A DNA stretch of 64,000 nucleotides, from IMG/VR virus record IMGVR_UViG_3300041402_000314, positions 140,150 to 204,149 of that record; one strand, given 5' to 3'. Position 1 is the stretch's first letter. Every line of letters starts with the position of its first letter. This document shows positions 3,362 through 44,660 of the stretch, piece after piece. The position numbers and the translations under genes were made by a program. Under the pieces are notes generated by a model that was not told the origin of the DNA, did not search any database, and saw nothing but the letters and a program-made list of their open reading frames with translations.

Positions 3362-3748
3362 TTAATCCTCCATTAATTCAAGACATTGATTAAGTGTTAT
3401 TAAGGCAAAAGGCATATCTAATTTATATTTAGCGCAATCTCTTACTACAAGACCACGTTTAAGACAGCTCTTAGCTGGTGAACCTATTTTACAGTCATTA
3501 TCTTTGCCTCCACCTTCACAGGTATATTCTATTAATCGGTATATACCATCTGCTCTAGTCTTACCCTCTCTTATCCACCACGTAGGTATAAAAACAAGTT
3601 CTGAAGGGATTACTTCACCTGATATAAGATGAGTTGTGATACCATCTGTCAATTCGGCAAATTTAATACCAGTCAACTTACTTATCTTGATCATCTTCGT
3701 TAGTTTATCTTTCATCAGACTTCTCCTTTTCAATCGCCTGTTTGACAT
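3362..3748 (-). CDS. hypothetical protein
   Basis: ORF in operon; start may be the internal MKDKL. Confidence 0.6.
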   Translation of the reverse strand: MSNRRLKRRSLMKDKLTKMIKISKLTGIKFAELTDGITTHLISGEVIPSELVFIPTWWIREGKTRADGIYRLIEYTCEGGGKDNDCKIGSPAKSCLKRGLVVRDCAKYKLDMPFALITLNQCLELMED

Positions 3749-4232
3749 CTTCTTCCATCCCTAATACACATTCTTTAACAAACCTCTTCTTTAAATATAT
3801 TTCACCGCAAGGTTTCTTCATTGGTTGTACACCGACTATTTCATTTTTGTATAACTGAGGAAATACCCTTCTAACAGGTAACTCTATTAACTGCCAATGA
3901 TTGAATAGTTCTTTGAGTAATCTTATCGCCCTTTCTAAAGCCGATTCTTTATTATGTTTTCCTTTTGGCGGATAAGGTATTTCTTCATATGTACCATCTG
4001 GCAACACATTCCAAACTTTATCACTATCAAAATTGGTTTCTGATGCATCTGGATTAAGATGTATATGATTATGACCTCTAGGGTTTATCCAGAATACATG
4101 TTCTTTCGGATTCCTTAAACAAACATATACAGAATTTCCATCCATTACTCTACGCCAACTTTCTTGTCTTTCTATTAGACTTTGACAAATAGGGCAATGT
4201 CGCATACCTGTTATTCTGGAAGCTTCATTCAT
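3705..4232 (-). CDS. hypothetical protein with N-terminal CxxC and an embedded gp23 (Gol-like) capsid peptide
   Basis: LPVRRVFPQLYKNEIVGVQPMKKPCG matches the T4-like major capsid motif VRRxxPxLxxxxIxGVQPMxxPxG. Confidence 0.7.
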   Translation of the reverse strand: MNEASRITGMRHCPICQSLIERQESWRRVMDGNSVYVCLRNPKEHVFWINPRGHNHIHLNPDASETNFDSDKVWNVLPDGTYEEIPYPPKGKHNKESALERAIRLLKELFNHWQLIELPVRRVFPQLYKNEIVGVQPMKKPCGEIYLKKRFVKECVLGMEEDVKQAIEKEKSDER

Positions 4233-4235
4233 TTG

Positions 4236-4451
4236 TCAAGCTCCCTTAAAGATAATAGCATTGATTTCTTTAATTCGCTCCAAATACAATTCAGTCATTT
4301 TCTTTCCGTGAGCATCATCACCGAGTCCATCATGTCTCAAATCCAAAGCCATATGATTTAAAGCTGCTCTTATGGTCATGGCATGAGCATCATTTAACAC
4401 TATATTATTAACGGTGATTTTAGGTTCTTTATATATGTTACCCATTTTCAA
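4236..4451 (-). CDS. hypothetical protein
   Basis: 71 aa ORF in operon. Confidence 0.65.
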   Translation of the reverse strand: MKMGNIYKEPKITVNNIVLNDAHAMTIRAALNHMALDLRHDGLGDDAHGKKMTELYLERIKEINAIIFKGA

Positions 4452-4774
4452 ACTCCCTCTAACTTATCTATAAGTTTCTGGTTTTCAAATATTTCAATAT
4501 GTGGTGTTGTTTCATGTGGGCATACATCAGGAAGAATCAAAACCGAGTTACCATGTTGTTCAAGAACTGCAAGCAATGCCTCTTGATTCCTCTTTAGAGC
4601 CTCTAACAATTCCAATGCTACAAGAGCGAGTCTATCTTTACCACCAAAACAATTATCACAGTAACAATTTTCTCTTGCTATCGGTGTATCATCCTCATCG
4701 TATATGTCACTATACATTGGGTTACGTTTATCTTTATAACAAAGATCATCATATAGTTTACTCATCACAACCAC
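4448..4774 (-). CDS. hypothetical protein (CxCxxC motif)
   Basis: CYCDNCFGG; first gene after promoter 4807-4835. Confidence 0.7.
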   Translation of the reverse strand: MVVMSKLYDDLCYKDKRNPMYSDIYDEDDTPIARENCYCDNCFGGKDRLALVALELLEALKRNQEALLAVLEQHGNSVLILPDVCPHETTPHIEIFENQKLIDKLEGV

Positions 4775-4806
4775 CTTTAATTAGTGTTTCAATTGATTAT
4801 GAGTAC

Positions 4807-4835
4807 AGCTTATCACAGGTAAATATGAATGTCAA
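4807..4835 (-). promoter_or_regulatory. sigma70-type early promoter
   Basis: TTGACA-17nt-TAAGCT; flanks similar to those of the promoter at 6100. Confidence 0.7.
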
Positions 4836-5005
4836 GAACTATTTTAATTAAATTTATTATTTAAGGTATGAGCCTAATAAATATGCAACGGCTATTACTG
4901 CACTGAAAATACCACCAACACATAAAGACTTCATATCCATATCCATTCCGAGACCTATGACTATTCCTGAAATGATAATCCATGCTGCTAATTTTATATA
5001 TAAAT

Positions 5006-5248
5006 TCATTTTACTCTCCTTAAAGCACTCTTTTTGATTCCCAGAAATTGAGCTGTAGACGCATTTGATTTACATACTGTCCTAAAAGATGAATCGAAGT
5101 GATGACCAACCACTTCACTATTCATAACGCCAGAAATGAGACGAACTATCGTTCCTTTCTTAACGCCCGAATGACCGTTAGTTAAAACTTCATATTCATC
5201 ATCACTTAAATTATGTAATTTACCATCATATCCCTTTATCTGTTTCAT
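5006..5248 (-). CDS. hypothetical protein
   Basis: likely start MKQIKG at 5248 after GGGAGA RBS. Confidence 0.6.
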   Translation of the reverse strand: MKQIKGYDGKLHNLSDDEYEVLTNGHSGVKKGTIVRLISGVMNSEVVGHHFDSSFRTVCKSNASTAQFLGIKKSALRRVK

Positions 5249-5249
5249 T

Positions 5250-5489
5250 TTATTCTCCCTCTCTGCCGAAGTAATCAAGGCTAAACCAACTACCATTATC
5301 CACTAACTCTGTATACAGTCCGTCTATTGATGTTTCCAAGCAATAAAGACTATCTCTTTCTGAATAGAAAAACCTTTGGCCTTTAGCACCTAATCTTTTC
5401 AACATGTTATTCGCTAACTTACATTGCTCTTCAGCATGTTCTTTGTTCTCAATCTTTACCAGTTCAATCCATACTTTAGTTTTAGTCAT
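5250..5489 (-). CDS. hypothetical protein
   Basis: 79 aa ORF with AGGAG RBS. Confidence 0.65.
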   Translation of the reverse strand: MTKTKVWIELVKIENKEHAEEQCKLANNMLKRLGAKGQRFFYSERDSLYCLETSIDGLYTELVDNGSWFSLDYFGREGE

Positions 5490-5713
5490 TTGATCGCTCC
5501 TTTATATTTGATAATTTACCAACCTTAGATACCATATGTCTCGATTGCTTTATTCATTTGATCTTTAGTAATCAACCGAACCTCAAAACCAGCGTCATTC
5601 CATGCCTTTACAGTTACTAATGATATTGACACATTTTTTGGGTCTGCACTGACGATTCCTAAAATTTTCTCACCCATTAGAGGGAATGCACAATAATACA
5701 TATTATTTCTCCT

Positions 5714-6058
5714 TTATGAAGTAATTCTACCAGCTTTCGAAGCGTCTTCAGCGTATATACTGAGAGGAAAGTTAAACGATGCGTACCTATCTCTTTCGAC
5801 ACCCAGACCAAATGGTGGGAATCTCATTGCTTCGAGTTCATCCCTAGAAACGTATCCTAACTCAGGGAACCCTTGCCCAAGATCACAGAGACCGAAGAAC
5901 ATTCTGCTCTCCTCGTCATATTCCGTAATTAACCATGTACATGCTCCGCCACCGAAAAACTTAACTACTGGTATGAAGTCAGACTCCCCACCAGACTCTT
6001 GATTGATCTTAGAGTTCCTAACCAGCTTATCTTCGATTATCTTAGTCATTAGTTTCAT
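5714..6058 (-). CDS. DUF2958-family protein
   Basis: PVVKFFxxGACTWLITE...FFGLCDLGxGFPELGYVSxxEL...GLGVERD signature. Confidence 0.85.
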   Translation of the reverse strand: MKLMTKIIEDKLVRNSKINQESGGESDFIPVVKFFGGGACTWLITEYDEESRMFFGLCDLGQGFPELGYVSRDELEAMRFPPFGLGVERDRYASFNFPLSIYAEDASKAGRITS

Positions 6059-6099
6059 TTCGATCTCCTTTAATTAATGTTTCTCTTAATTATGAGTAC

Positions 6100-6128
6100 A
6101 GCTTATCATAGGTAGATGTGGAAGTCAA
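6100..6128 (-). promoter_or_regulatory. sigma70-type early promoter
   Basis: TTGACT-17nt-TAAGCT. Confidence 0.7.
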
Positions 6129-6140
6129 GAACTATTTTAT

Positions 6141-6176
6141 AAAAAAAGGTAGGCCGAATTAACGACCCACCTTTTT
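6141..6176 (-). terminator. intrinsic terminator of the PspA operon
   Basis: GC hairpin flanked by A7 and T5 tracts. Confidence 0.7.
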
Positions 6177-6197
6177 GATACCATATATTTATTATTG

Positions 6198-6959
6198 TTA
6201 CTTCTTAAGAGCAGCTAAACGATCTTGAATACTCATAGTGGAAGTATCATCTCCACCACCCATAGCAGCCGTGATATTGGGGTCTTCATCGAGTCCACCA
6301 GTAGGCTTCAGAAGACGTGCTTTCATTGTTGATGCATCGGCAGACGCTTTGGCATCATCAGTACGTTTCTGCATGGCTTCGATAGCAGTATTGATACCAC
6401 CTGTCTTGCTCCTAATACCACTGGCAAGCTCGGCACGTTTCGCCTTCTTCTTAGCACGTTCCTCTGCCAGTTGTGCTTTCTGCATACCCTGTTTTGCCTT
6501 CTTAAGTTCGGCACGAGCATCTTTGAGAGTATCAGCCGCTTCAGAAGCGGTAGCTTCGAGTTCATCCAACATTTCCTTGGCATCGATAGCTTCTTGCTTC
6601 TCACGCTCGACATCATCTCCCATTTCTTCGAGAAGACCAAGAAGGGTTCCGAGACTAGCGGATAGAGAGGCAACCTTTGTATCATCGTCTCCTGCTTCTG
6701 CTATCTGATTCTGAAGAGTCTCGGCAGCTTGTAACCTCTGATTATAGAGCTTGACGATTTCATCCGCTTCCCTCTGCTCCTTTCCATGCTCGACTCTCGC
6801 CTGACCAGCTTCTTTAAGAATCTGATTTAGGTTATCATCCATCATTTTGATGGTGGCTTCAGTAGCTCCCTCGGTATCGTATCTAACGATAGCACCAGCA
6901 AGAGCCTCACCCGCATCTTCGATTTTTGTTTTTGTAAACGCTGATAGAAATTTTAACAT
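6198..6959 (-). CDS. PspA/IM30-like coiled-coil protein
   Basis: amphipathic N-terminus, long heptad coiled coil, C-terminal QDRLAALKK; next to a DUF2491-like gene as in yjfJ-yjfK. Confidence 0.7.
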   Translation of the reverse strand: MLKFLSAFTKTKIEDAGEALAGAIVRYDTEGATEATIKMMDDNLNQILKEAGQARVEHGKEQREADEIVKLYNQRLQAAETLQNQIAEAGDDDTKVASLSASLGTLLGLLEEMGDDVEREKQEAIDAKEMLDELEATASEAADTLKDARAELKKAKQGMQKAQLAEERAKKKAKRAELASGIRSKTGGINTAIEAMQKRTDDAKASADASTMKARLLKPTGGLDEDPNITAAMGGGDDTSTMSIQDRLAALKK

Positions 6960-6978
6960 TTTATTTCTCCTTTTTATT

Positions 6979-7659
6979 TTAGATTATTGATAGTGACATA
7001 GGATGAATTGTAAATCCTTTATATATGACTATATTAGCAAATACCTCACCCATATCATCTTCCAGATCGAATTCGACTGCTACCAGTAGATATTCTGTTT
7101 CATCGCTGTTGAGAAACCTGTTGAATAGCATAGCATCACTATTATATTCGCCTTCTTCGGCTTCAGATTGTTCACCAGTTATTTCAATATCTTCCACAAT
7201 ACTGACTGGAGATGACCATTCACCGCTACCCCAAAGTCGTAAATAGGTTTCATCGTCTGGAGTCTCAATATCGGAATAGCCTATTAGACCGTCATCCGTA
7301 TCAAGCCAATCACTCCAATCTTCATCCGATTGAGGCTCAAACCCATAAGTCTGTTTGAAGAGAATAACTTCAGAACCATCCTTATTGAGTTGCATGAATA
7401 CTTCATTATCGTTTTCCGTATTCTTCATGTAGACTCTATAAGTCTTATCTCCGAATATCTTGAGTCGGGAAATTGCGAGGACGGTGTATTTACCGCCCTC
7501 GAACCATTCCAATTCAGGATTTAAGAGAGATGGGGTATCATCCAAAGTTATCAGGCTGTTTAATCTGATTCCTAGAGGAGCATCATCATGGACAATACCC
7601 TTTTTGGAATCCTTACGTTCCTTTAACTTATGTTTGAAGTAATCACCGACAAAACTCAT
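6979..7659 (-). CDS. DUF2491 (YjfK-like) protein
   Basis: PLGIRL, WxxWL..GLIG, YxRxW, AMLFxR, EYLLV motifs. Confidence 0.7.
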   Translation of the reverse strand: MSFVGDYFKHKLKERKDSKKGIVHDDAPLGIRLNSLITLDDTPSLLNPELEWFEGGKYTVLAISRLKIFGDKTYRVYMKNTENDNEVFMQLNKDGSEVILFKQTYGFEPQSDEDWSDWLDTDDGLIGYSDIETPDDETYLRLWGSGEWSSPVSIVEDIEITGEQSEAEEGEYNSDAMLFNRFLNSDETEYLLVAVEFDLEDDMGEVFANIVIYKGFTIHPMSLSII

Positions 7660-7661
7660 GA

Positions 7662-9266: not shown

Positions 9267-9293
9267 GTTACTTTATCCTCCTATATTTCCTTA

Positions 9294-10328: not shown

Positions 10329-10338
10329 GATTGTCTCC

Positions 10339-10367
10339 ATTATACCTAATTATAATTTATTTGTCAA
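10339..10367 (-). promoter_or_regulatory. sigma70-type promoter of the channel/TAXI/PspA operon
   Basis: perfect TTGACA-17nt-TATAAT. Confidence 0.8.
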
Positions 10368-10729: not shown

Positions 10730-10748
10730 TTTATTTCTCCCTTGGTTA

Positions 10749-11093: not shown

Positions 11094-12719
11094 ATGGCTA
11101 AAAAAGATTATTATTTGGACGAAGAGGGAAACCCTGTTTTACCGTCCAATACAACATTACTTCCCAAAATCGCGCGATACGATGGCAAGCCTAAAATCAA
11201 ACGTGCTGGCATTAAAATGGAGCTTACTAGAGATCAGCTAGAAGAGATGGCTAAATGCTCTGCTGACGTAGAATACTTCATGTCAAGATATTGTTATATC
11301 GTTCACCCAGACAAGGGTAAACATAATATAGAGCTATATCCTTTTCAGTATGACTTTGTTAATCACCTAAGAGATAATAGATTTTCTATTGTATTGGCTC
11401 CCAGACAATGCGGTAAATCTACAATTACTGCAATGTATGTACTCCACTATATTCTTTTCAATGATGATAAGAAAGCTATTATCATGGCTAACAAGCTAAA
11501 GATAGCCAAAGAGATATTCCAGAAAGTTAGGATTGCCTATGAGTATCTACCGATTTTCCTTCAGGCTGGTGTCGTAGAATGGGCAAAGACTAGCTGTACC
11601 CTAGAGAATGGTTCTGGATGTTCTGCTGAAGCGACTAGCGCAGACGGTATGAGGGGTATATCTGGAAACCTTATTATCCTTGATGAGTTTGCTTTCCTCA
11701 AGAAGAATATAGCTGATGAATTCTTTACATCCATGTATCCGACTATATCAGCATCCAAAGAGGCGAAACTTATAATCATCTCTACTCCGAATGGTATGAA
11801 CCACTATCATTCGATATGGAATAAAGCGGTTAAAAAGAAGAATACATTTGCGCCATTCAAGGTTAAATGGAATGATGTACCTGATCGTGATGAAGATTTC
11901 AAAGAAGAAACAATTAAGAATATTGGTAAGCTTAAATGGAATCAGGAATATGAGTGTTCCTTTATAGGTAGTTCTAAAACATTAATTAAACCAGAAATTC
12001 TTGAGCAGTTAGAATCCGCAGACCCTATAGAGATTATAGATAACTGTTTTAAGATATACGAACAACCTATTGCTGGAAATACCTATGTTGTAGGTGCAGA
12101 CTCCGCTAAAGGTACTGGTGGTGATTATTCTGTTTCTCAAGTCATAGATATTACAGCCTTTCCATTTAGACAAGTTGCCGTCTATAGGAATAATGAGATA
12201 AGCACAAATAAGTATGGTGATAAAGTATATGAAATAGCTATGAAGTATAATGAAGCTTTTGTCATGTGCGAGAATAACGATGTCGGTCAAGCAGTAGTGA
12301 ATAAATTATGGCATGACTTAGAATACGAGAATCTAGTCAACTATGCTGCTACTAAAGCTGGTAGAAAAGATATAGGTATTAGAGCTACCAAGAAAACTAA
12401 ATCTATGGGATGTGATCTACTTCAGGAATTCTTTGAGGATTTCTTAATAGAGATATTTGACTTAGATACCATATATGAAATATCTAAATTCGAGGAAACA
12501 TCTACTGGTATATTCAAGGCAGAAGATGGAGAACATGACGATACTGTTATGGCTCTTCTCTGGGCATTGTTTATTATAAAGACTAATTATATTGACCGAG
12601 AAGATGATATCAGGGCTTCTAGGGATAGTGATGAAGACCAATATGATGATGAACCACTAGCACCCATCATAATCGATGGGGCTGGTGAAGAAGACGGTAA
12701 TTTTTTATTCCATAACTAA
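11094..12719 (+). CDS. terL: terminase large subunit (T4 gp17-like)
   Basis: Walker A APRQCGKST, Walker B LIILDEFAF, ISTPNG, nuclease GADSAKG...HDDTVMAL. Confidence 0.97.
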   Translation: MAKKDYYLDEEGNPVLPSNTTLLPKIARYDGKPKIKRAGIKMELTRDQLEEMAKCSADVEYFMSRYCYIVHPDKGKHNIELYPFQYDFVNHLRDNRFSIVLAPRQCGKSTITAMYVLHYILFNDDKKAIIMANKLKIAKEIFQKVRIAYEYLPIFLQAGVVEWAKTSCTLENGSGCSAEATSADGMRGISGNLIILDEFAFLKKNIADEFFTSMYPTISASKEAKLIIISTPNGMNHYHSIWNKAVKKKNTFAPFKVKWNDVPDRDEDFKEETIKNIGKLKWNQEYECSFIGSSKTLIKPEILEQLESADPIEIIDNCFKIYEQPIAGNTYVVGADSAKGTGGDYSVSQVIDITAFPFRQVAVYRNNEISTNKYGDKVYEIAMKYNEAFVMCENNDVGQAVVNKLWHDLEYENLVNYAATKAGRKDIGIRATKKTKSMGCDLLQEFFEDFLIEIFDLDTIYEISKFEETSTGIFKAEDGEHDDTVMALLWALFIIKTNYIDREDDIRASRDSDEDQYDDEPLAPIIIDGAGEEDGNFLFHN

Positions 12720-19466: not shown

Positions 19467-19474
19467 TATAAATA
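19467..19474 (+). promoter_or_regulatory. T4-type late promoter
   Basis: TATAAATA upstream of sheath. Confidence 0.8.
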
Positions 19475-19514: not shown

Positions 19515-21155
19515 ATGCCACAATTACTTTCACCCGATGTAAACATAGTCGAAAGAGATTTAAGTGCTTTTGTTGCGTCTGTAGCTACCAGTATAGCAGT
19601 ATATGTAGGTAGGGCTACTAAAGGACCAGTATGGGAAAAGACACAGGTTTCCAATGAAAGACAGTTTGCAGAACTATTCGGTGAGCCGACATCAACTGAT
19701 TATGAGGATTTTTTTACCGCTGCTGGATTCCTTCAGTATGGTAACACCTTGTATTACACAAGAGTCGTTGATACCGCAACTGCTAAAAACTCACAATTAA
19801 ACGTAAGCACTGGTGCTGCTCCTTCTGCTGGAGATGGTGATTATGTTGCTGATTGGGAAGAATATACGCCCTCATTCGGTGCTGAGAAAATGCAAGTGTA
19901 CGCTAAGTATCCGGGAGCTTACGGTGACACTGATTTCAAAGTAGCAATGATCAGTAATACAGATTGGGCTACTATAGGTACATCACCTACTCTCTCTGGT
20001 TATGAGTCTGTCATCGATCAAGGTCCAGAGCTTGCTACAGAATTCCTTGTTATCGTATCTGCTCTACAGTCAGATGGAGAATATGAAATCCTCGAAACTT
20101 ACCTTGTTTCTGATACCGAAGGAACTAAGGACTTCGAAGGCAATAACATGTATGTCGATGAGGTCATTAATAAAGGCTCAAACTACATACTAGTATTCAA
20201 TAATACTGGCGTGTCCGCTGAACTACAGTCGTTTGCTGAGACTGCTCCTGCTAATGGTGCGGACGGTGATATAAATGAAGCCGATATCGTACTAGGATAT
20301 GATCTTTATGATAACCCTGAAGAAATCGAAATCAACTATGTGATAGGTGGTAGTCATACTACTGTTGCAACTGCAAATGCTATTCTTGCGCTATGTGTTG
20401 CAAGAGCAGACTGTTTTGCGATTCTCGATGTTCCTAAATCTGATGTTGTAGGTATTGCTAGTATTTCAACCGCTGTAAGTAATGTAGTAGACTATAGAAA
20501 GACGGAACTTAATGCTAATACTTCTTACGGTGCGCTATATGCTAACTGGCTTTATATCTATGATAAATATAACGATACAAACAGATGGGTTCCGAGTGGT
20601 GGTCATGTAGCTGGTATCTATGCCCATACTGCTAATGTAGAGGATGCATGGTTCGCTCCTGCTGGACTTAATAGAGGTATTTTGAGTAACGTTATTAAGC
20701 TGGCTATGAATCCGGGTAAATCTTATAGAGATACGCTATATAAGAATCAAATCAATCCATTGGTTAGTTTCCCCGGTCAAGGAATTAGTGTTTGGGGTCA
20801 AAAGACTCTCCAGACTAAACCTTCTGCATTCGATAGAGTTAATGTTAGATTACTCTTTCTATACATGGAAAAAGCTATTGGTAGAAGTGCAAAATATGTT
20901 GTTTTCGAACAAAATGATCAGCTTACTAGAAGTATCTTTAAGAACCAGATTGAACCATTCCTTGATGATATCAAAGGCAGAAGAGGTATATATGACTTCT
21001 TAGTATTGGTAGATGAATCCGTTAATACGCCCGAAAGAGTGGACAGAAATGAGTTTCATTGTGAAATTTTCGTAAAACCAGTTAAGAGTGCAGAATTTAT
21101 CGTACTTCGTTTCACTGCGACAAAAACTGGTGTAGACTTTAGTGAGTTAACTTAA
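19515..21155 (+). CDS. gp18: tail sheath protein (T4 gp18-like)
   Basis: LSPxVxxxExD N-terminus, WFAPAGLNRG, WGQKT...AFDRVNVRLLF, FEQND, IFVKP. Confidence 0.96.
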   Translation: MPQLLSPDVNIVERDLSAFVASVATSIAVYVGRATKGPVWEKTQVSNERQFAELFGEPTSTDYEDFFTAAGFLQYGNTLYYTRVVDTATAKNSQLNVSTGAAPSAGDGDYVADWEEYTPSFGAEKMQVYAKYPGAYGDTDFKVAMISNTDWATIGTSPTLSGYESVIDQGPELATEFLVIVSALQSDGEYEILETYLVSDTEGTKDFEGNNMYVDEVINKGSNYILVFNNTGVSAELQSFAETAPANGADGDINEADIVLGYDLYDNPEEIEINYVIGGSHTTVATANAILALCVARADCFAILDVPKSDVVGIASISTAVSNVVDYRKTELNANTSYGALYANWLYIYDKYNDTNRWVPSGGHVAGIYAHTANVEDAWFAPAGLNRGILSNVIKLAMNPGKSYRDTLYKNQINPLVSFPGQGISVWGQKTLQTKPSAFDRVNVRLLFLYMEKAIGRSAKYVVFEQNDQLTRSIFKNQIEPFLDDIKGRRGIYDFLVLVDESVNTPERVDRNEFHCEIFVKPVKSAEFIVLRFTATKTGVDFSELT

Positions 21156-21170: not shown

Positions 21171-21228
21171 GGAAGGACAGTGGGTAGCTCCCATTGATGA
21201 TGTGTTTACTCCATATCATCTTACTTCC
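21171..21228 (+). promoter_or_regulatory. structured 5' leader (three-way junction)
   Basis: GGAAG/CTTCC closing CAGTGGG-TAGCT-CCCATTG and ATGATGTG/CATATCAT hairpins. Confidence 0.55.
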
Positions 21229-21258
21229 ATACATAACTTAAATAATGGAGTAAACATT

Positions 21259-22239
21259 ATGAAAGAAAAAATAATTTGTCATATTTGCTATAAAGAATTT
21301 AATTCTATTCTTAGTTTATCGAGACACATCAAACCCGCTCACAGTATATCAAGTAAAGATTATTTTGATAAATTTATCAAAAAAGAGAAAAGTGGTTTAT
21401 GCTCAGTATGTTCAAATCCTACTCGTTTTGTTAATTTCGGTATAGGATACAAAAAATATTGTTCAAATAGCTGTCATAACAGAGATAAGAAAGCTCTGAC
21501 AGATATAAGAGATGCACTTATCTATGAAGAAAAAATAAAAACCGAAACGATAGTTTTTGACTGTGAGATTTGCGGATATAAAATTTTTAATAACTATCAT
21601 GGTATTGGTTCTCATCTAAAACATAAACATAACTTATCTATACAAGAATATTATGATAAATATTATTTAGAAAATATATTAGATAAGAAATGTAACATTT
21701 GTGACCGAGAAACATCATTTCGCTCTTTAGAAGTTGGGTATACTAAATATTGCTCTATTTCTTGTAGTAACAAGGAAGAGGTTAACATATTAGCAAGAAA
21801 GAAAGGTATAAATAAGAAAGAAGTAAAGGAGAGACAGTCTCGTAATTTATCACAGAGAATTTTAAATGGGACTTTTAATCCATTCGCTAAAAAATTTAAA
21901 ACTGGATATTTTTATTCTGAGAAAAATCAGAAAGATTTGTATTACCGTTCATCATATGAATTAAAAGCATATCAAATGTTGGAACAGATGTCTTTAGTTA
22001 ACATATATGAAACTGAACCATTTAGAATACCTTATAAGGATATGAAAGGTGTAACTAGAAATTATATACCTGATATTTTGATTATCTATGAAGATGGTAT
22101 GAGAGAATTGGTAGAAGTGAAACCAGAAAATTTATTAAAGGATGAAACCATTCAAATAAAAACAGAATCTGCCAAACAGTATTGTAAAGCCAATAACATG
22201 TCCTTTAATATATGGACTGAAAAATTCCTAGAACTATAA
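21259..22239 (+). CDS. TnsA-like PD-(D/E)xK endonuclease with two tandem Zn-binding repeats (free-standing endonuclease or gp4-like)
   Basis: RSSYE, EPxxIPY, YIPD, LVEVKP, WTE; duplicated CxxC..H...H / CxxC...GYxKYCSxSC; ATG 21259 has a GGAG RBS. Confidence 0.8.
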   Translation: MKEKIICHICYKEFNSILSLSRHIKPAHSISSKDYFDKFIKKEKSGLCSVCSNPTRFVNFGIGYKKYCSNSCHNRDKKALTDIRDALIYEEKIKTETIVFDCEICGYKIFNNYHGIGSHLKHKHNLSIQEYYDKYYLENILDKKCNICDRETSFRSLEVGYTKYCSISCSNKEEVNILARKKGINKKEVKERQSRNLSQRILNGTFNPFAKKFKTGYFYSEKNQKDLYYRSSYELKAYQMLEQMSLVNIYETEPFRIPYKDMKGVTRNYIPDILIIYEDGMRELVEVKPENLLKDETIQIKTESAKQYCKANNMSFNIWTEKFLEL

Positions 22240-38359: not shown

Positions 38360-38370
38360 GAGATAAATAA

Positions 38371-39516: not shown

Positions 39517-39517
39517 T

Positions 39518-40027
39518 ATGTGGAAATTACAAGCAACCGCAACAATAAATCTAAAAATTCCATTAATTAATAGTGATGGTACACAAGCTATAGGGGAGAC
39601 TTCTGGCCTATTCACTAAAATTATAGCTCCAGACGGAAGCGTTATAAGCGGATACACAGAAGCAACTTTTAGTGAGCCGAATAGCGATGGTGTATATAAT
39701 GTGTCTTTTCCTTCTAATGCTCCTACGAAAGCGTTTTTACTTGAAGATCAAGCCAATCCATATAGTGTAACTCTCGATAGTTCAACCGCAGATGTTGAAT
39801 CTATGACTATTAATGTATGGATAACCTCTGTATATCCTTGGGAAACATCTTTAGAATCTACACTAGAAAGTATTAGTGGAGATATCCAAGATATAGAATT
39901 TGATACTACTGGTTTAGCCTTAGAATCTACCTTAGAATCTGTCAGTGGTGATATAAATAGTATTAAGGGTACAGGTTATGATGAAAATATACACAGTCTT
40001 AAAGAAATTAAAAATAGAATAGGATAA
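39518..40027 (+). CDS. putative virion structural protein
   Basis: GVY motif; duplicated LESTLES(I/V)SGDI. Confidence 0.6.
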   Translation: MWKLQATATINLKIPLINSDGTQAIGETSGLFTKIIAPDGSVISGYTEATFSEPNSDGVYNVSFPSNAPTKAFLLEDQANPYSVTLDSSTADVESMTINVWITSVYPWETSLESTLESISGDIQDIEFDTTGLALESTLESVSGDINSIKGTGYDENIHSLKEIKNRIG

Positions 40028-40030
40028 TAC

Positions 40031-40588
40031 ATGGCTGGAATAAATATAGTAGATAGTGTAAAAATATTAGGCAATGATGATGCTTCTGAAGCTATCGTAG
40101 ACCAATACAATAAAGCTTTAGCTGTTATTACTACCGAACATGAAAAAATCCATGAAGGAAAGGGATATACAGTTAGTTTAGATTTTATAGTTCCTGAAAA
40201 CGGATTTGTTGATATTTTAATGGTTAATCCTGCTCTAAATTGGCCTCACTTAAGATATTATGCTAGTGAAACAACTGGTGCGCCATGTCAAATATGTTTT
40301 TTTAGAGAGCCAACTGTAAATGATAATGGTTCATTGGCATCTAGTAGAAATAATAATTTTAATTCCGACAATATATCCAATATGCAAGTGTATTCCGCTC
40401 CTGATATTGCTGATGTTGGCGATGAACAAGATTGTGATTATATTGTAGGCGGAAAGTTTGAAGGTGGGTCAGTATCACCAGCAATAAATGAATGGGTATT
40501 AGTTCCTTCAGAAAAATATTTGCTACGATTTGAAAATAAATCAGGAATACCAGTAGACTTAAATATACACCTATTTTATTATGAATAA
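40031..40588 (+). CDS. putative virion structural protein
   Basis: HEKIHEG...EWVL.P..KYL...YE; late operon. Confidence 0.6.
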   Translation: MAGINIVDSVKILGNDDASEAIVDQYNKALAVITTEHEKIHEGKGYTVSLDFIVPENGFVDILMVNPALNWPHLRYYASETTGAPCQICFFREPTVNDNGSLASSRNNNFNSDNISNMQVYSAPDIADVGDEQDCDYIVGGKFEGGSVSPAINEWVLVPSEKYLLRFENKSGIPVDLNIHLFYYE

Positions 40589-40600
40589 AAGGAGAATTAA

Positions 40601-41329
40601 ATGAGAGGTTGGTCAAATATACAAGCTATAGGAGAAAGAGATAGTATAGCTGTAGTTTCTCAAGGTAGTGATTTATGGCATCATCCCACTATAACTTCTA
40701 TAACTACTCCGCCTAGTGGTGGAGAGCAGATGGAAATATACAGCACTGATGATGAAGATAATATTATAGGTACTGGTATCAGACAAATTTATCTTCATTA
40801 TTTAGATTCTGCTGGTGATGCTGCTTATGAAATATTAGATATGGATGGGACTACGCCTGTTGCTACCAGTGCTGATGATATACGATTTATACAAGACATA
40901 CATTCTATATCTAATGGCGATAATGGAGTAGCAGTAGGGAATATATTTATAAGAAGCATAGCCAATCCAACAACAAACATATATGACTTTATAGAATTGG
41001 GTGGAAATATGTCATTAACTATTCAAAAAATGGTTCCTGCTAATAAGACTTTATATATAACTCATTGGCATGGTTCGGCATCTGGAAAAAATTCTGTAGC
41101 TATGAGGCTTAGAAGTACCGATCATCATGGCGAATTATTTGAAAATACATTTATATTTAAAGATACTGTCGCTCTTGAAAACTCGTCTTTTAGTAGAACT
41201 TGGAGCAAAGAAGAATGGGTTCCTATTCCAGAATTCTCTATTGTAAAGATTTCTGTTTGGACTTCTGGAGCTGGAGCAAATGTAGCTGGCGGTTGGAATG
41301 GTGTCTTAATAGATAAAACAAGCACATAA
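40601..41329 (+). CDS. putative virion structural protein
   Basis: D...GTG.R....YLD, GN........VPA.KT.YI. Confidence 0.65.
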   Translation: MRGWSNIQAIGERDSIAVVSQGSDLWHHPTITSITTPPSGGEQMEIYSTDDEDNIIGTGIRQIYLHYLDSAGDAAYEILDMDGTTPVATSADDIRFIQDIHSISNGDNGVAVGNIFIRSIANPTTNIYDFIELGGNMSLTIQKMVPANKTLYITHWHGSASGKNSVAMRLRSTDHHGELFENTFIFKDTVALENSSFSRTWSKEEWVPIPEFSIVKISVWTSGAGANVAGGWNGVLIDKTST

Positions 41330-41341
41330 AGGATATTATAA

Positions 41342-42274
41342 ATGCAATCATATTTTAAACATGGCATGGGTGATGCCTTAACACTATATTTCGAAATCTT
41401 CAGAAATAATGTTGGTCAAACTGGCGAGACACCTACTGTAGCCATCCAGAAAAAATCTAATGATGAATGGCTAAATGATACTCTCGATGGATGGCAAGCA
41501 GAATATAATGATATTGCTTTATCTGAAGCCTCTTCTGCTGATCTACCCGGTATATACAATATTAATATTTCCCATATAGATGCTACTGCCGAAACATACA
41601 ATTGCTATTTCAAAAATACTGGCGATAATGCTGGAAGTGATTTTGAAGCTCATGTATTCACTGGAGCAGTTTATGTTCCTTCAAGTTCTGCATATGCGTC
41701 TGAAACTGTTCTAGGCCACTTGGATGATATCAAACACAAAGATGGTAATAAGACCTTTGACAATACTACAGATTCCTTAGAGGCTATTGTTGATAATGGT
41801 GTGAGTTCTGCCGACTTAGACTTGATCGCTAAAGAGGCTACTCTACTTGGCGTATCTGGAGACATAGAAGATATTAATTCTGGATTATTTGATGTAGGCG
41901 GAGACATAGCCAAAGTTATCGTTCAACCAGTACAAGGTAATTTCGATTATACTAGCATCAAGAATCAGAGAGTTGAGATCAAACGTGGTTCTAGTGCCGA
42001 TATACCTTATTCTCTAAGTCAAAATATCAGTGGTTATGACGTATATTTCGGAGTTAAGAAGGACTTTAGAAGCGATACCTTTGATATCCTAGAGAAAGAC
42101 ATTACGGCATATGTATCAGACTTCGAGACTGGTACAGGAACTATAAACTTAACTGTTGCCGAAACTGACCTAGAAGATGGTGACTACATAGGTGAAATGA
42201 GACTAGAGCAAGGCGATGAAGTAGTTAAGCCTGTCGAATTCAGACTACGAATACTACCGACTATTTTCACATAA
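41342..42274 (+). CDS. virion structural protein with BppU-like C-terminal domain
   Basis: FD.TTDSLEAI; C-terminal RG...., G.I.L...ET.L..G.Y..E. Confidence 0.65.
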   Translation: MQSYFKHGMGDALTLYFEIFRNNVGQTGETPTVAIQKKSNDEWLNDTLDGWQAEYNDIALSEASSADLPGIYNINISHIDATAETYNCYFKNTGDNAGSDFEAHVFTGAVYVPSSSAYASETVLGHLDDIKHKDGNKTFDNTTDSLEAIVDNGVSSADLDLIAKEATLLGVSGDIEDINSGLFDVGGDIAKVIVQPVQGNFDYTSIKNQRVEIKRGSSADIPYSLSQNISGYDVYFGVKKDFRSDTFDILEKDITAYVSDFETGTGTINLTVAETDLEDGDYIGEMRLEQGDEVVKPVEFRLRILPTIFT

Positions 42275-42279
42275 CTACC

Positions 42280-42322
42280 GACTCCTTTGTGATATAAATA
42301 ATTAAAATATCACAAAGGAGTC
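42280..42322 (+). promoter_or_regulatory. RBS-sequestering hairpin containing a late promoter
   Basis: perfect 16-bp inverted repeat GACTCCTTTGTGATAT/ATATCACAAAGGAGTC; TATAAATA 42293-42300; AAGGAG in the 3' arm. Confidence 0.85.
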
Positions 42323-42324
42323 TT

Positions 42325-43080
42325 ATGTCTGATCAAAGAGTTTCCATTATTATCCCGAATAAAAATAGTTATGAAATGTTAAAGGATTGCATTGATTCTA
42401 TTTTCCTTACCACCTCTTATCCCAACTACGAGATAGTCATTGTAGAAAATGGGTCAACAGAGGAAGATATATTTGAGTATTATGAAATCTTGAAAAAGAA
42501 TCATAGTAATCTCAGAGTATTCACCTATAAAGAACCTTTCAATTTTTCCGCTATAAACAATTTTGCTGTCCGACAAACAAACAGTGAATTCCTGTTATTT
42601 CTCAATAATGATACCAAAATAATCAATGAAGATTGGCTAATCGCTATGGTTCGCATTCTTAAGAATAAAAAGAATGGCGTAGCTGGTGCTACTCTCCTTT
42701 ACGATGATGATACTGTCCAACATGCAGGAATAGCAACAGACCCTAAATGGATAGCATACCACATCAACCATAAAATTACAAGAGAAAACATTCCGACTAA
42801 ATCAATGACGGTTGATGCTGTTACTGGCGCATGTTTATTAACTACAACCGATATATTCAATAAGGTGGGTGGCTTCGATGAGAACCTTCCTATTGCATAT
42901 AATGATGTCGATTTCTGTCTAAAGGTAAGAGATAGAGGCTACAAGATTAAATGGACTCCGAATTCTCTACTATATCATTACGAATCTAAGACAAGAGGAT
43001 TGGATGACGGAACAGAGAAGAGAGCTAGACTTAAACGTGAATCTGAATACATGAGGTCAAAATGGAAGACAAAACTTTAG
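42325..43080 (+). CDS. GT2 glycosyltransferase
   Basis: VSIIIP, VENGS, FNFSAINN, FLNND, AVTGACL, GGFDE, DVDFC, HYESKTRG. Confidence 0.92.
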   Translation: MSDQRVSIIIPNKNSYEMLKDCIDSIFLTTSYPNYEIVIVENGSTEEDIFEYYEILKKNHSNLRVFTYKEPFNFSAINNFAVRQTNSEFLLFLNNDTKIINEDWLIAMVRILKNKKNGVAGATLLYDDDTVQHAGIATDPKWIAYHINHKITRENIPTKSMTVDAVTGACLLTTTDIFNKVGGFDENLPIAYNDVDFCLKVRDRGYKIKWTPNSLLYHYESKTRGLDDGTEKRARLKRESEYMRSKWKTKL

Positions 43081-43847
43081 TCAATTTAGTAATAGTCACA
43101 TTTAATCGTTGGGAATATACCGAACAGTGTATACCGAGTATAAGAGAAACCGCTTCTGATAATATTCCATACATAATAACCGTTGTCGATAATGGCTCGA
43201 CTGATGGGACTCCAGACAAATTAAAGGAAATGTATAATGCTGGTCTCATAGATCATCTTATATTACTCAAAGAGAATATCGGTATCTCTAAGGCTCAAAA
43301 TCTAGGGTGGAAATGTCATGAAGAAGTTCCTTTCTATGCTAAGATAGATAATGATATTATATTCAATAAAAATGGCTGGTTAAATGGCATTATAAATACT
43401 TTTGAGAAGACCACCAATATCGGTGCTTTAGGTTATCAATGCTCTGATGACGGTGCTGAATACCCTGCTGTTATAGATAACGGAGTCGAGTATAGAGTTA
43501 AGAATGGCAATATTGGCGGAGCCTGTTTCTTCGTACCGAAACATATCAATGAGGAACTAGGATATTGGTGTGAGGAATATGGCAAGTATGGTGAAGAGGA
43601 TGCCGACTATGGGATGCGTATTACCGTCTCAGGCCACTTAAATTGTTATATGATGGATAGGTCTACCATTACCCATTTACCAGACGAGAAAGGCGATTAT
43701 AGGTCTTTCAAGGATAATGAGAGAGAAGAGAACTTGAAGGGAAATTTCTGGAATCTGATCAAGGAATATAGAGCTGGAAAAAGACCTTTGAAAATAGAGA
43801 CAAATATTTTAGATGAAGCTGATATCGAAGGAGAATATATAAGATGA
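43062..43847 (+). CDS. GT2 glycosyltransferase
   Basis: IVTFNR, VVDNGSTDGT, N.G...A.N, IDND, G.EDAD. Confidence 0.9.
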   Translation: MEDKTLVNLVIVTFNRWEYTEQCIPSIRETASDNIPYIITVVDNGSTDGTPDKLKEMYNAGLIDHLILLKENIGISKAQNLGWKCHEEVPFYAKIDNDIIFNKNGWLNGIINTFEKTTNIGALGYQCSDDGAEYPAVIDNGVEYRVKNGNIGGACFFVPKHINEELGYWCEEYGKYGEEDADYGMRITVSGHLNCYMMDRSTITHLPDEKGDYRSFKDNEREENLKGNFWNLIKEYRAGKRPLKIETNILDEADIEGEYIR

Positions 43848-44281
43848 AAATACCTGAATTGATAGACGAATATTTTGAAATTCTTGATAGATTGATTGAA
43901 ATTAATAAATTAAGAAGAGAGGAAATCCATGTTAACATAAAAAATATGATAGGTTCCCAATATTACATTGATGAATACTGTACAATTAAATGTGATATTG
44001 GGAGACAAACTGGAAAGTCTGAATATGTTAGGAGAAGAGGTAATAAAAATACATTAGTAATTGTAACTAAGTCCGCATATAAGGCACATTATAAAGATTT
44101 TGAGGGAACGGTAATGTCACCAATAGAGATTATGAACGGTAAGATACGTGGAATTGAAAGATTCGAAACCATATTTATAGAGGAACCTTCTTTTACTCTT
44201 AAGAATGTTTCTAAAGATCAATTATATAATGAGTTGGTGGATAATACGAAAGAACAAACCTTTATTATATTAGGAATGTAA
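43844..44281 (+). CDS. small protein with terminase-ATPase-like Walker motifs
   Basis: GRQTGKS and RG...TIFIEE in only 145 aa. Confidence 0.65.
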   Translation: MKIPELIDEYFEILDRLIEINKLRREEIHVNIKNMIGSQYYIDEYCTIKCDIGRQTGKSEYVRRRGNKNTLVIVTKSAYKAHYKDFEGTVMSPIEIMNGKIRGIERFETIFIEEPSFTLKNVSKDQLYNELVDNTKEQTFIILGM

Positions 44282-44282
44282 G

Positions 44283-44660
44283 ATGAAGAAAGAATATGCT
44301 CATGAAATTGATATGACTCACCTAGTACCACCATATAAGGCAAAAGAAAGCGATCTTATTTTTAATAATAGACCTACTCAGGAAGATGTTATTAAAGCTG
44401 AAAGGGATGATAAACTTATTATTATATTATTAGAAGTTCCTGAATTGACTTGTGATGAGCTGATTGCGTTTACAAAGGGATATCTAAATTGTTTAGGAAT
44501 TGAAGAATCTAGCCTTAACATACAAACATATGTGGTATCTGAAATAATAGATTATGATGGTTGGAAAGAGAGTTTTCTTAAAAATTATTTACTGATTAAC
44601 GAAATGCATGAGCCTTGGTTTGCTCCTGCTGGATTTAATAGAGGTATGATAAAAAAATGA
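44283..44660 (+). CDS. small protein ending in a tail-sheath signature motif
   Basis: PWFAPAGFNRG at the C-terminus. Confidence 0.65.
   Translation: MKKEYAHEIDMTHLVPPYKAKESDLIFNNRPTQEDVIKAERDDKLIIILLEVPELTCDELIAFTKGYLNCLGIEESSLNIQTYVVSEIIDYDGWKESFLKNYLLINEMHEPWFAPAGFNRGMIKK

What the first reader, a model, noticed from the sequence alone, without database searches (positions are those of the whole stretch)
3705..44660. Genome-wide mimicry theme: capsid, terminase and sheath motifs as isolated fragments
Three separate small ORFs (3705-4232, 43844-44281, 44283-44660) each keep only a highly conserved motif of a hallmark virion protein. Capsid and terminase are established triggers of bacterial immunity. 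Together with the rRNA and tRNA mimics, this suggests a decoy strategy at both protein and RNA level. This synthesis is inference.
Basis: inference. Interest (0 to 1): 0.72.

Follow-up and report, generated by a model that had tools for sequence, protein, structure and literature searches.

The report
Capsid and sheath motifs in small ORFs
In this T4-like marine-sediment phage, two small conserved genes really do carry short copies of the most conserved segments of the capsid and tail-sheath proteins, but the supposed terminase fragment is an ordinary small ATPase domain and nothing shows a genome-wide decoy strategy.

Summary
The three ORFs exist exactly as stated, but they are three unrelated things.

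- **ORF1 (3705-4232, minus strand):** a confidently folded zinc-ribbon-like N-domain with a flexible tail. The tail copies the gp23 'Gol' segment (RR.FP.L...VGVQPM..P.G), and the Pfam Gp23 hit is above its cut-off. The tail recurs in distant relatives of 24-38% identity. An HMM built only from those relatives hits just ORF1 and gp23 among this phage's 414 genes. ORF1 is under purifying selection (omega 0.28).
- **ORF2 (43844-44281):** not a terminase fragment. It is a complete stand-alone RecA-like P-loop domain from a widespread small phage family. It has a paralogue in the genome and is present or absent among relatives. It shares only the RQxGKS heptapeptide with TerL.
- **ORF3 (44283-44660):** an unrelated 110-aa body ending in an 11-aa sheath motif. 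A sharply bounded 30/32-nt patch matches the sheath gene, beyond chance and beyond codon bias. The tail is conserved across the ORF3 family.
- **A fourth case outside the window:** a stand-alone sheath C-terminal domain next to the DNA polymerase gene.

ARAGORN finds no tRNA gene and Rfam no RNA family in the window. Motif capture is real and selected in two of the three ORFs. A decoy function is untested and plausible only for ORF1.

The parts
3705..4232 (-). ORF1, 175 aa: small accessory protein, an N-terminal CPxC/C..H domain plus a gp23-like tail
   Evidence: ORF listed. An SD sequence AAGGGAG lies 8 nt upstream. omega 0.28 against the 89%-identical homologue P0001. A 0.7-kb block is shared with contig L013 while the flanks differ.
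3969..4205 (-). ORF1 N-domain (aa 10-88): beta-rich, zinc-ribbon-like. It recurs as a stand-alone family of 80-100 aa proteins.
   Evidence: Exhaustive HMMER search gave 39 representatives, and most cover only aa 12-85. Invariant or nearly invariant residues are C13, P14, C16, D31, N33, C38, H45, F47 and W48. AF2 pLDDT is 82-97. No structural relative: Foldseek E>0.02, best VIA Z 3.7.
3792..3878 (-). ORF1 gp23 'Gol'-like segment (aa 119-147): PVRRVFPQLYKNEIVGVQPMKKPCGEIYL
   Evidence: Pfam Gp23 and phrog_138 hits. It aligns with own gp23 aa 64-92 and with T4 gp23 at about aa 98-128. The independent-tail HMM confirms it. pLDDT is 44-54, so it is flexible.
43844..44281 (+). ORF2, 145 aa: stand-alone RecA-like/ASCE P-loop domain. 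It is not a terminase fragment.
   Evidence: Full-length match to phrog_2586. A paralogue lies at genome 104014-104517. Its Atlas model has pTM 0.80, and its neighbours are SF2 DEAD/ResIII domain 1 at TM 0.60-0.65 plus viral clusters of 138-176 aa. omega 0.22-0.40. It is absent from L016 and L008.
44000..44020 (+). ORF2 Walker A-like GRQTGKS (aa 53-59). Own TerL has PRQCGKS.
   Evidence: TerL and ORF2 are the only two proteins in the genome with RQxGK[ST]. The motif is invariant in the family alignment A3.
44168..44188 (+). ORF2 Walker B-like TIFIEEP (aa 109-115)
   Evidence: Conserved as T-I-x-I-[DE]-E-P in A3. hhalign aligns it weakly with TerL LIILDEF, E 0.045, probability 1%.
44283..44660 (+). 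ORF3, 125 aa: small protein of unknown fold in the late glycosyltransferase operon, with a sheath-derived C-terminal tail
   Evidence: Six family members of 57-86% identity all end in P-x-x-x-P-A-G-[FL]-[NK]-[RL]-G. omega 0.12-0.6. The body without the tail does not detect the sheath.
44616..44647 (+). 32-nt patch in the ORF3 tail, 30/32 identical to the sheath gene. Its AGAGGT also serves as the Shine-Dalgarno sequence for the overlapping downstream start in relatives.
   Evidence: Searches show sharp boundaries. The empirical null is and the codon-bias test. Overlapping downstream genes are seen in L009 and L016.
19515..21155 (+). Tail sheath gene (546 aa), source of the motif
   Evidence: Matches T4 gp18 408-655 at E 1e-63. 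TATAAATA lies at 19467.
20649..20680 (+). Sheath copy of the patch (WFAPAGLNRGI), equivalent to T4 gp18 W490-G499 at the end of domain III
21202..22239 (+). Free-standing homing-endonuclease-like gene (C2H2 zinc fingers plus TnsA-like nuclease), immediately downstream of the sheath gene and about 520 nt from the patch
   Evidence: Pfam PF08722 at 8e-16 plus zinc-finger hits. Paralogous fragments lie elsewhere in the genome.
11094..12719 (+). Large terminase gene (541 aa), the comparator for ORF2
   Evidence: Terminase_6N at 1.4e-28. Sequence.
42293..42300 (+). T4-type late-promoter motif TATAAATA ahead of the GT-GT-ORF2-ORF3 gene string
   Evidence: The same motif sits directly upstream of the TerL, sheath and other virion genes. 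A role in timing is an inference.

Best explanation
The finding bundles three unrelated small genes of a roughly 204-kb T4-like myophage from marine sediment.

(1) ORF1 belongs to a family of small phage proteins built on a zinc-ribbon-like N-domain with interchangeable C-terminal tails. In one subfamily the tail is a conserved copy of the gp23 segment that T4 workers call Gol. This segment joins the flexible N-arm to the first core strand. In T4 it binds EF-Tu, helps target gp23 to GroEL, and is read by the Lit protease. I infer that the tail acts as a free peptide ligand. It would occupy whatever partner nascent gp23 engages through this segment: EF-Tu, the chaperonin, or a motif-reading sensor. 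That would make ORF1 a competitor or adaptor, probably expressed before the late genes.

(2) ORF2 is an independent, mobile, stand-alone P-loop NTPase domain. Its Walker A happens to be of the terminase flavour.

(3) ORF3 is a small protein in a late glycosyltransferase operon. Its last 11 residues were captured from the sheath gene by a short DNA exchange. The tail is retained partly because its codons overlap the ribosome-binding site of the next gene, and possibly because the peptide is used.

Shown: the anatomy, the homology, the selection and the conservation. Inferred: partner binding, expression timing, and any anti-defence role.
For: ORF1
- Pfam Gp23 above its cut-off.
- Alignment to own gp23 and to T4 gp23.
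- Six of 40 family representatives carry the tail, despite 24-38% identity.
- The independent-tail HMM hits only ORF1 and gp23 aa 67-93.
- omega 0.28.
- Confident N-domain and flexible tail.
- No DNA identity with g23, so the copy is old.
- A second copy is absent from about 1,890 cultured T4-like phages: 1,894 records, 1,895 places.
- Gol biology: PMC3014915 (EF-Tu, Lit), PMC3012670 (GroEL targeting), PMC9546572 (aa 66-105 flexible, core starts at L106).
- No late-promoter motif on its strand nearby. A sigma70-like hit lies in a repeated intergenic element upstream.

ORF2.

ORF3.
Against: - No result shows that ORF1 binds anything. The EF-Tu co-fold gave no answer.
- The host, and hence its EF-Tu and defence repertoire, is unknown.
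- In distant members the tail is degenerate: Pfam sees it only weakly in P0013 (13 bits) and not in the others.
- An early-expressed Gol-like peptide could just as well trigger a Lit-like system as block it.
- Early timing rests only on the absence of TATAAATA and on gene-cluster style.
- For ORF3, the overlap with the RBS and possible gene conversion could explain the conservation without any peptide function.
Confidence: 0.45

Rival explanations
1. The three ORFs, together with RNA mimics, form a coordinated decoy strategy that soaks up bacterial sensors of capsid, terminase and sheath.
For: Capsid and terminase are documented triggers, and Lit and CapRel read short capsid motifs (bioRxiv 10.64898/2026.01.04.697583; PMC3014915). 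ORF1 carries exactly the Lit-read segment. ORF1 and ORF3 are under selection.
Against: ORF2 is not terminase-derived. Avs-type terminase and capsid sensors wrap whole folds, which a 7-30 aa motif cannot mimic. The sheath is not an established trigger; one search lists it only as a possibility. ARAGORN finds no tRNA gene and Rfam no family in the window. Hallmark fragments number 3 of 324 small ORFs. The ORFs differ in inferred timing, locus and distribution. There are no PADLOC or NCBIfam hits.
Confidence: 0.08
2. Recombination relics. The motifs are scars of illegitimate or endonuclease-driven recombination with essential genes, carried along neutrally in otherwise functional or decaying small ORFs.
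For: The genome is rich in homing-endonuclease genes and their fragments, including one right beside the sheath gene. The ORF3 patch is sharply bounded DNA identity. It lies 14 nt from a synteny breakpoint. A chimeric contig joins ORF3 to a foreign sheath at this patch. The genome has about 40 short repeat pairs.
Against: The ORF1 tail is conserved across 24-38%-identical relatives and has no DNA identity with g23. The ORF3 tail is kept down to 57% identity. All the ORFs show omega below 1. True debris in this genome looks different: split endonuclease ORFs at window 55940-56374.
Confidence: 0.17
3. Virion-assembly role. The copied segments are assembly-interface peptides. The ORF1 tail would dock on the scaffold or on gp23, to be packaged or to modulate head assembly. 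The ORF3 tail and the stand-alone sheath C-terminal domain would dock on sheath subunits, for example to cap polymerisation, chaperone it, or recruit the neighbouring glycosyltransferases.
For: The gp23 N-terminal region contacts the scaffold and later makes inter-capsomer contacts (PMC9546572). ORF3 lies in an operon preceded by a late-promoter motif, next to glycosyltransferases. The extra ORF at genome 60227-60553 is a whole sheath C-terminal domain with a good SD sequence.
Against: ORF1 sits among small minus-strand ORFs without a late-promoter motif. The sheath motif is internal to domain III, not a known exchange arm. There are no proteomic or co-fold data.
Confidence: 0.2
4. Inter-phage competition. 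The fragments are dominant-negative pieces that poison the capsid or sheath assembly of co-infecting T4-like competitors, while the phage's own diverged proteins tolerate them.
For: The fragments copy the segments most conserved across T4-like phages, hitting about 1,700-1,900 cultured phages. They are only 28-40% identical to the phage's own proteins.
Against: Purely conceptual. The ORF3 patch is nearly identical to the phage's own sheath. There are no data on co-infection.
Confidence: 0.05

Closest known systems
Gol peptide of T4 gp23 (about aa 93-122 in the literature; aligned here at about 98-128)
   Same: The ORF1 tail aligns residue for residue with this segment. RR, P, L, GVQPM, P and G are invariant across ORF1, P0001, own gp23 and T4 gp23. 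Both are short peptides that can act outside the folded capsid protein (PMC3014915).
   Different: Gol is part of the capsid protein itself, not a separate gene. ORF1 puts the segment on a different protein with a zinc-ribbon-like domain. Neither EF-Tu binding nor Lit activation or inhibition by ORF1 has been tested.
Phage counter-defence proteins that compete with a structural trigger, for example DSAD1 against the tail-tube activator of DSR2 (PMC11087589, abstract seen)
   Same: The concept: a small phage protein occupies the sensor site used by a virion protein.
   Different: The abstract seen describes DSAD1 only as another phage-encoded protein; that it is not a sequence copy of the tube protein is from my own knowledge. 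ORF1 is a sequence-level copy of a capsid motif. No sensor is known here.
Capsid-targeting sequences of T4 internal proteins (my own knowledge of T4 head assembly; partly covered in PMC3012670)
   Same: A short peptide on an accessory protein uses capsid-assembly contacts.
   Different: The T4 CTS is N-terminal, unrelated in sequence, and cleaved by gp21. The ORF1 motif is C-terminal and gp23-like.
T4-type large terminase ATPase domain (Pfam Terminase_6N)
   Same: ORF2 shares the RQxGK[ST] P-loop and a hydrophobic-DE Walker B, and is an ASCE or RecA-like fold.
   Different: No profile similarity. The Walker A-B spacing is 56 aa against 93. There is no nuclease domain. The nearest structural neighbours are SF2 helicase domain 1.
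phrog_2586 and related clusters of 138-176 aa viral hypothetical proteins
   Same: ORF2 and its paralogue are full-length members.
   Different: The family has no known function, so membership gives no mechanism.
Contractile tail sheath gp18 (phrog_23; PDB 3J2M, 9MKB)
   Same: The ORF3 tail corresponds to gp18 W490-G499. The ORF at genome 60227-60553 corresponds to gp18 574-655.
   Different: Both are isolated pieces of 11 aa and about 80 aa. Neither can form a sheath subunit.

Membership tests
T4-type major capsid protein (Pfam PF07068 Gp23, HK97 fold) | Coverage of the HK97-fold core (most of the 376 profile positions) | tested here: not met
   ORF1 matches only profile positions 12-38 of 376. 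The real gp23 at genome 110860-112002 covers positions 1-355.
T4-type major capsid protein (Pfam PF07068 Gp23, HK97 fold) | Conserved N-arm/core junction motif RR..P.L......GVQPM..P.G | tested here: met
Gol-type peptide (functional definition: binds EF-Tu domains II-III and enables Lit cleavage) | Sequence equivalence to the T4 Gol segment | tested here: met
   Alignment A5 with T4 gp23 taken from NC_000866.
Gol-type peptide (functional definition: binds EF-Tu domains II-III and enables Lit cleavage) | Binding to EF-Tu | tested here: inconclusive
   The co-fold of ORF1 with EFTU1_ECOLI returned 'no answer' with score 0.00. The tool states this is not evidence either way.
Gol-type peptide (functional definition: binds EF-Tu domains II-III and enables Lit cleavage) | Activation or inhibition of a Lit-type protease | not testable with these tools
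   Needs a biochemical or genetic assay. The alanine-scan paper is not held.
Large terminase (Terminase_6N ATPase plus nuclease) | Profile match to the terminase ATPase domain | tested here: not met
   No Pfam hit at E<=10. hhalign probability 1%. TerL scores -1.3 bits against the ORF2 family HMM.
Large terminase (Terminase_6N ATPase plus nuclease) | Terminase-flavoured Walker A, [SGP]RQxGK[ST] | tested here: met
   GRQTGKS. Only ORF2 and TerL have it among 414 proteins.
Large terminase (Terminase_6N ATPase plus nuclease) | C-terminal RNase H-like nuclease domain | tested here: not met
   ORF2 is 145 aa and ends just after the Walker B region.
Stand-alone small viral P-loop proteins (phrog_2586) | Full-length profile match and RecA-like fold | tested here: met
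   phrog_2586 at 1.1e-13 over aa 9-143. My own AF2 model was too poor to add anything (pLDDT 52.7).
Contractile tail sheath (phrog_23 / gp18) | Homology beyond the WxxPAGxNRG motif (for ORF3) | tested here: not met
   The family HMM without the tail gives no sheath hit. With the tail, the sheath scores E 0.025 over 22 positions.
Contractile tail sheath (phrog_23 / gp18) | Shared descent of the motif-coding DNA (for ORF3) | tested here: met
   30/32 nt at 50.7 bits against a null maximum of 43.0. P about 0.011 given amino-acid identity and codon usage.
Known anti-phage defence or annotated bacterial families | Any profile match for ORF1, ORF2, ORF3, the paralogue or the extra sheath-like ORF | tested here: not met
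   PADLOC gave none. NCBIfam gave none of significance.

The most novel reading that the evidence does not exclude
The long-form ORF1 subfamily (zinc-ribbon-like domain plus Gol-like tail) is a dedicated counter-measure against defences that read the conserved gp23 motif or use EF-Tu as co-sensor, such as Lit-type proteases. Expressed before gp23, the tail would occupy EF-Tu or the sensor without activating it. This would be the first case of a phage encoding a sequence-level mimic of its own capsid trigger motif.
Probability: 0.13. Interest if true: 0.8.

Novelty: new variant of a known kind. Interest (0 to 1): 0.5.

Why it matters
Motif-reading capsid sensors such as Lit and CapRel impose a dilemma on phages, because the sensed segment is the part of the capsid protein that cannot mutate.

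A conserved family of small phage proteins displays that very segment on a flexible tail. This offers a concrete, cheap-to-test candidate for how phages might compete for the segment's partners (EF-Tu, the chaperonin, or a sensor). Alternatively, it could show how accessory proteins borrow capsid contacts.

The work also serves as a caution. Of three 'hallmark fragments' read by eye, one was a generic P-loop and one rests on 11 residues. The real signal emerged only from family-wide and DNA-level controls.

Tried and rejected
**Searches and predictions that led nowhere**
- IMG/VR scans for relatives of ORF1, ORF3 and the extra sheath-like ORF found none.
- Searching the 204.7-kb relative's whole record was not possible, because it is not held. 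Cognate sheath and gp23 genes of relatives could therefore not be compared.
- The ORF2 profile against PDB sequences gave no hit.
- AF2 of ORF2 with 6 sequences was too poor to use (pLDDT 52.7).
- The ORF1 model against PDB, BFVD, AFDB clusters and VIA-wide gave nothing significant.
- The ORF1 and EF-Tu co-fold gave no answer.
- The Gol alanine-scan paper is not held.
- Contigs of the distant long forms were too short to reach their gp23.
- Sequencing runs gave only DNA runs from marine sediment and cold seep, so there is no transcription evidence.

**Ideas considered and rejected**
- ORF3 as a truncated sheath gene, because P0005 reads on into sheath sequence. Rejected: the extension belongs to a foreign lineage (65% identical to a Flavobacterium phage sheath), has higher GC, and sits on a 1.3-kb patchwork scaffold that ends in a PEP-utiliser fragment. 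It is probably an assembly join at the shared patch.
- The whole ORF3 body as sheath-derived. Rejected.
- ORF2 and ORF3 as an obligate pair. Rejected.

**Left open**
- Whether the ORF at genome 60227-60553 is a gp25-type baseplate protein. It has no Pfam hit, so this is unsupported.

Full report
**Setting**

The window is bases 140150-204149 of a 204,149-bp viral record, estimated about 89% complete. GC content is about 35%.

The record is a divergent T4-like myophage:
- Its sheath gene is only about 67% identical, over short stretches, to Campylobacter and Prochlorococcus phage sheath genes.
- It has a gp23-type capsid gene at genome 110860-112002.
- It has a T4-type large terminase at window 11094-12719.
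- It uses the T4 late-promoter motif TATAAATA directly ahead of the terminase, sheath and other virion genes.

Near-identical DNA occurs in marine-sediment and cold-seep metagenomes.

**Observation**

The three ORFs are present exactly as described. Each has a plausible Shine-Dalgarno sequence. Each is under purifying selection against relatives from independent assemblies:

| ORF | omega |
|---|---|
| ORF1 | 0.28 |
| ORF2 | 0.22-0.40 |
| ORF3 | 0.12-0.60 |

They are genes, not debris.

**ORF1 (3705-4232, minus strand)**

*The capsid match.*
- Pfam finds Gp23 at 26.8 bits, above the 24.4-bit cut-off, over aa 120-146. PHROGs finds 'major head protein' over the same residues.
- Against the phage's own gp23 the match spans ORF1 aa 98-146 and gp23 aa 43-91.
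- Aligned with T4 gp23 taken from NC_000866, the core corresponds to T4 at about aa 98-128. RR, P, L, GVQPM, P and G are invariant.
- This is the 'Gol' segment. It is described as the most conserved part of gp23. It binds EF-Tu domains II-III and thereby enables the Lit protease (PMC3014915).
- The gp23 N-terminus also targets fusion proteins to GroEL (PMC3012670).
- In capsid structures, aa 66-105 are a flexible arm that probably contacts the scaffold, and the ordered core begins at L106 (PMC9546572).

*Is the match more than chance?*
- Pairwise BLAST alone is borderline genome-wide. ORF1-gp23 scores 38.1 bits. Shuffle maxima were 35.0 in ten runs and 39.3 in one of six larger runs.
- The decisive evidence comes from the family. 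An exhaustive HMMER search of 1.84 billion representatives found 39 relatives. Most are 80-100 aa proteins consisting only of the N-domain (CPxC ... DGN..Y.C ... H.FW.N).
- P0013, P0022, P0038 and P0042 are only 24-38% identical to ORF1. Yet after a charged linker they also carry a V.VQP[MLV]..P tail.
- An HMM built from those four tails alone, without ORF1 or its close homologue, was searched against all 414 genes of this phage. It hits only ORF1 (28.9 bits) and gp23 aa 67-93 (26.6 bits, E 8e-8). The next score is 10.5 bits.

*Other properties of ORF1.*
- Six of 40 representatives carry the tail, counting ORF1 itself. Other long forms carry unrelated tails. The N-domain is therefore a carrier for interchangeable C-terminal modules.
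- AF2 with 38 sequences folds the N-domain confidently (pLDDT 82-97) and leaves the gp23-like segment flexible (pLDDT 44-54).
- No library has a structural relative of the N-domain.
- There is no DNA-level identity with g23, so the copy is old.
- In 50,697 cultured-phage records the ORF1 tail hits 1,894 records at 1,895 places. It essentially finds only gp23 itself, so a second copy is rare.
- ORF1 and the 71-aa ORF upstream form a 0.7-kb block shared at 90% identity with another contig whose flanks differ. That contig has an HNH endonuclease next to the block.
- ORF1 lies in a run of small minus-strand ORFs with no late-promoter motif. A sigma70-like site lies in a repeated intergenic element upstream. 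Early expression is my inference from this.

**ORF2 (43844-44281)**

GRQTGKS in ORF2 and PRQCGKS in TerL are the only RQxGK[ST] motifs among 414 proteins. A Walker B-like TIFIEEP follows.

Everything else argues against a terminase fragment:
- No terminase Pfam hit at E<=10.
- hhalign against TerL aligns only the Walker B region, at E 0.045 and probability 1%.
- TerL scores -1.3 bits against the family HMM.
- ORF2 matches phrog_2586 from end to end.
- It has a 167-aa paralogue at genome 104014-104517.
- Its stored ESM model (pTM 0.80) resembles RecA-like domain 1 of SF2/ResIII helicases, and several viral clusters of 138-176 aa proteins.
- It is an indel. In contigs L016 and L008 the ORF3 homologue follows the glycosyltransferase directly, with no ORF2 between.

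**ORF3 (44283-44660)**

*What matches.*
- The last 11 residues, WFAPAGFNRGM, match sheath residues 381-391, WFAPAGLNRGI. This corresponds to T4 gp18 W490-G499 at the end of domain III.
- At the protein level the match is within noise (31 bits).
- With the tail removed, the family HMM does not find the sheath at all.

*Why the DNA match is real.*
- A sharply bounded 32-nt patch is 30/32 identical between window 44616-44647 and 20649-20680.
- It scores 50.7 bits against a maximum of 43.0 in 25 Markov-shuffled genomes.
- Given the amino-acid identity and this genome's codon usage, at most one synonymous difference has P of about 0.011.
- The patch therefore reflects shared descent or gene conversion.

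*Conservation and context.*
- The tail is conserved in all six family members, down to 57% identity (PIVVPAGLNRG in the most distant).
- Part of that conservation has a mundane cause. In relatives the next gene starts at an ATG overlapping the ORF3 stop, so AGAGGT (the R-G codons) is its Shine-Dalgarno sequence.
- ORF3 sits in a glycosyltransferase / methyltransferase / radical-SAM / epimerase cluster preceded by a late-promoter motif.
- In this phage a methyltransferase-like gene is inserted right after it. The synteny block ends 14 nt past the ORF3 stop.
- A TnsA-like homing endonuclease gene lies immediately downstream of the sheath gene, about 520 nt from the sheath copy of the patch. Endonuclease-driven recombination is thus a plausible origin, but this is inference.
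- One database protein (P0005) reads from ORF3 straight into sheath sequence. That extension is from a foreign lineage, has higher GC, and lies on a 1.3-kb patchwork scaffold. I treat it as an assembly join at the shared patch.

**Is there a genome-wide theme?**

I compared all 324 small ORFs with all larger genes, with shuffled controls. The only virion-hallmark fragments are:
- ORF1 against gp23.
- ORF3 against the sheath.
- One case outside the window: a 108-aa ORF at genome 60227-60553, directly after the DNA polymerase gene. It is a stand-alone copy of the sheath's extreme C-terminal domain. It matches T4 gp18 574-655 and phrog_23 at E 6e-10, has a good SD sequence, and has no second copy in 1,735 cultured phages.

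The remaining fragment-like hits are paralogous small-gene families and split homing-endonuclease ORFs. In the window, ARAGORN finds no tRNA gene and no Rfam family reaches its gathering score. PADLOC and NCBIfam are silent for all these ORFs.

So there is a modest, real tendency in this lineage to keep pieces of gp23 and gp18 as separate small genes. There is no coordinated protein-plus-RNA mimicry programme.

**Mechanism**

For ORF1 I commit to the reading that the tail is a free Gol-type peptide ligand presented by a zinc-ribbon-like carrier. It would compete for, or recruit, the partner of nascent gp23: EF-Tu, the chaperonin, or a motif-reading sensor.

The literature makes a decoy role conceivable only against sensors that read short motifs (Lit, CapRel), not against Avs-type sensors that envelop the fold. 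The single computational binding test gave no answer.

The rivals cannot be excluded. They are neutral recombination relics, assembly or packaging contacts, and poisoning of competitor phages. They are weighted in the report sections.

**Novelty and verdict**

The unified decoy interpretation is only partly supported.

The ORF1 long-form subfamily appears undescribed in the libraries and papers I could search, and it gives a directly testable hypothesis. ORF2 is ordinary. The ORF3 tail is a curiosity with a partly mundane explanation.

Noticed in passing
outside the window: genome 60227-60553 (locus L020), directly downstream of the family-B DNA polymerase gene at genome 57659-60214: A 108-aa ORF that is a stand-alone copy of the tail-sheath C-terminal domain. 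It matches T4 gp18 574-655 and phrog_23 at E 6e-10, and is 28% identical to the phage's own sheath. It has a GGAGG Shine-Dalgarno sequence. No equivalent second copy occurs in 1,735 cultured phages.
   Followed up: partly
window 21202-22239: A free-standing homing-endonuclease-like gene (C2H2 zinc fingers plus a TnsA-like nuclease domain) with its own TATAAATA, immediately after the sheath gene. Paralogous fragments lie at genome 82343-82792 and 105899-106396.
   Followed up: partly
window 55940-56374 (minus strand): Two adjacent small ORFs of 86 and 56 aa match consecutive parts of a pair of HNH-endonuclease paralogues at genome 3677-5029 (phrog_374). This is genuine split-gene debris and a useful contrast to ORF1 and ORF3.
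   Followed up: partly
window 4781-4836, window 4774-4846 vs 6067-6139, and genome 85443-85535 / 113266-113348: A family of repeated intergenic elements of 56-83 nt at 81-100% identity. One copy lies just upstream of the ORF1 gene string and overlaps a sigma70-like promoter hit. They could be promoter or stem-loop cassettes of the kind that shuffle genes in T4-like phages.
   Followed up: no
window 42325-51400 and locus L009 8467-17935: A large cluster with late-promoter motifs, encoding GT2 glycosyltransferases, methyltransferases, a radical-SAM enzyme, DUF5672 and an NDP-sugar epimerase/dehydratase. It shows indel polymorphism between relatives: ORF2 is present or absent, and a methyltransferase-like gene at 44737-45294 is inserted only here.
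   Followed up: partly
locus L008 (ENA scaffold, 1321 nt): A patchwork contig joining the glycosyltransferase end, the ORF3 body, a foreign sheath fragment (GC 0.40) and a PEP-utiliser C-terminal fragment. It is probably an assembly chimera seeded by the conserved sheath patch, and a warning for database proteins such as P0005.
   Followed up: yes
outside the window: genome 139969-140139 vs 92441-92611, and genome 131669-132099 vs 43279-43719: A 171-nt inverted repeat at 90.6% identity lies just before the window start. A 441-nt inverted partial duplication at 75% identity covers the 5' part of a 333-aa gene.
   Followed up: no
protein P0017 (415 aa): A database protein with six tandem repeats, each weakly matching ORF1 aa 23-63. 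It is probably a repeat artefact or an unrelated repeat protein. I excluded it from the family alignment.
   Followed up: no
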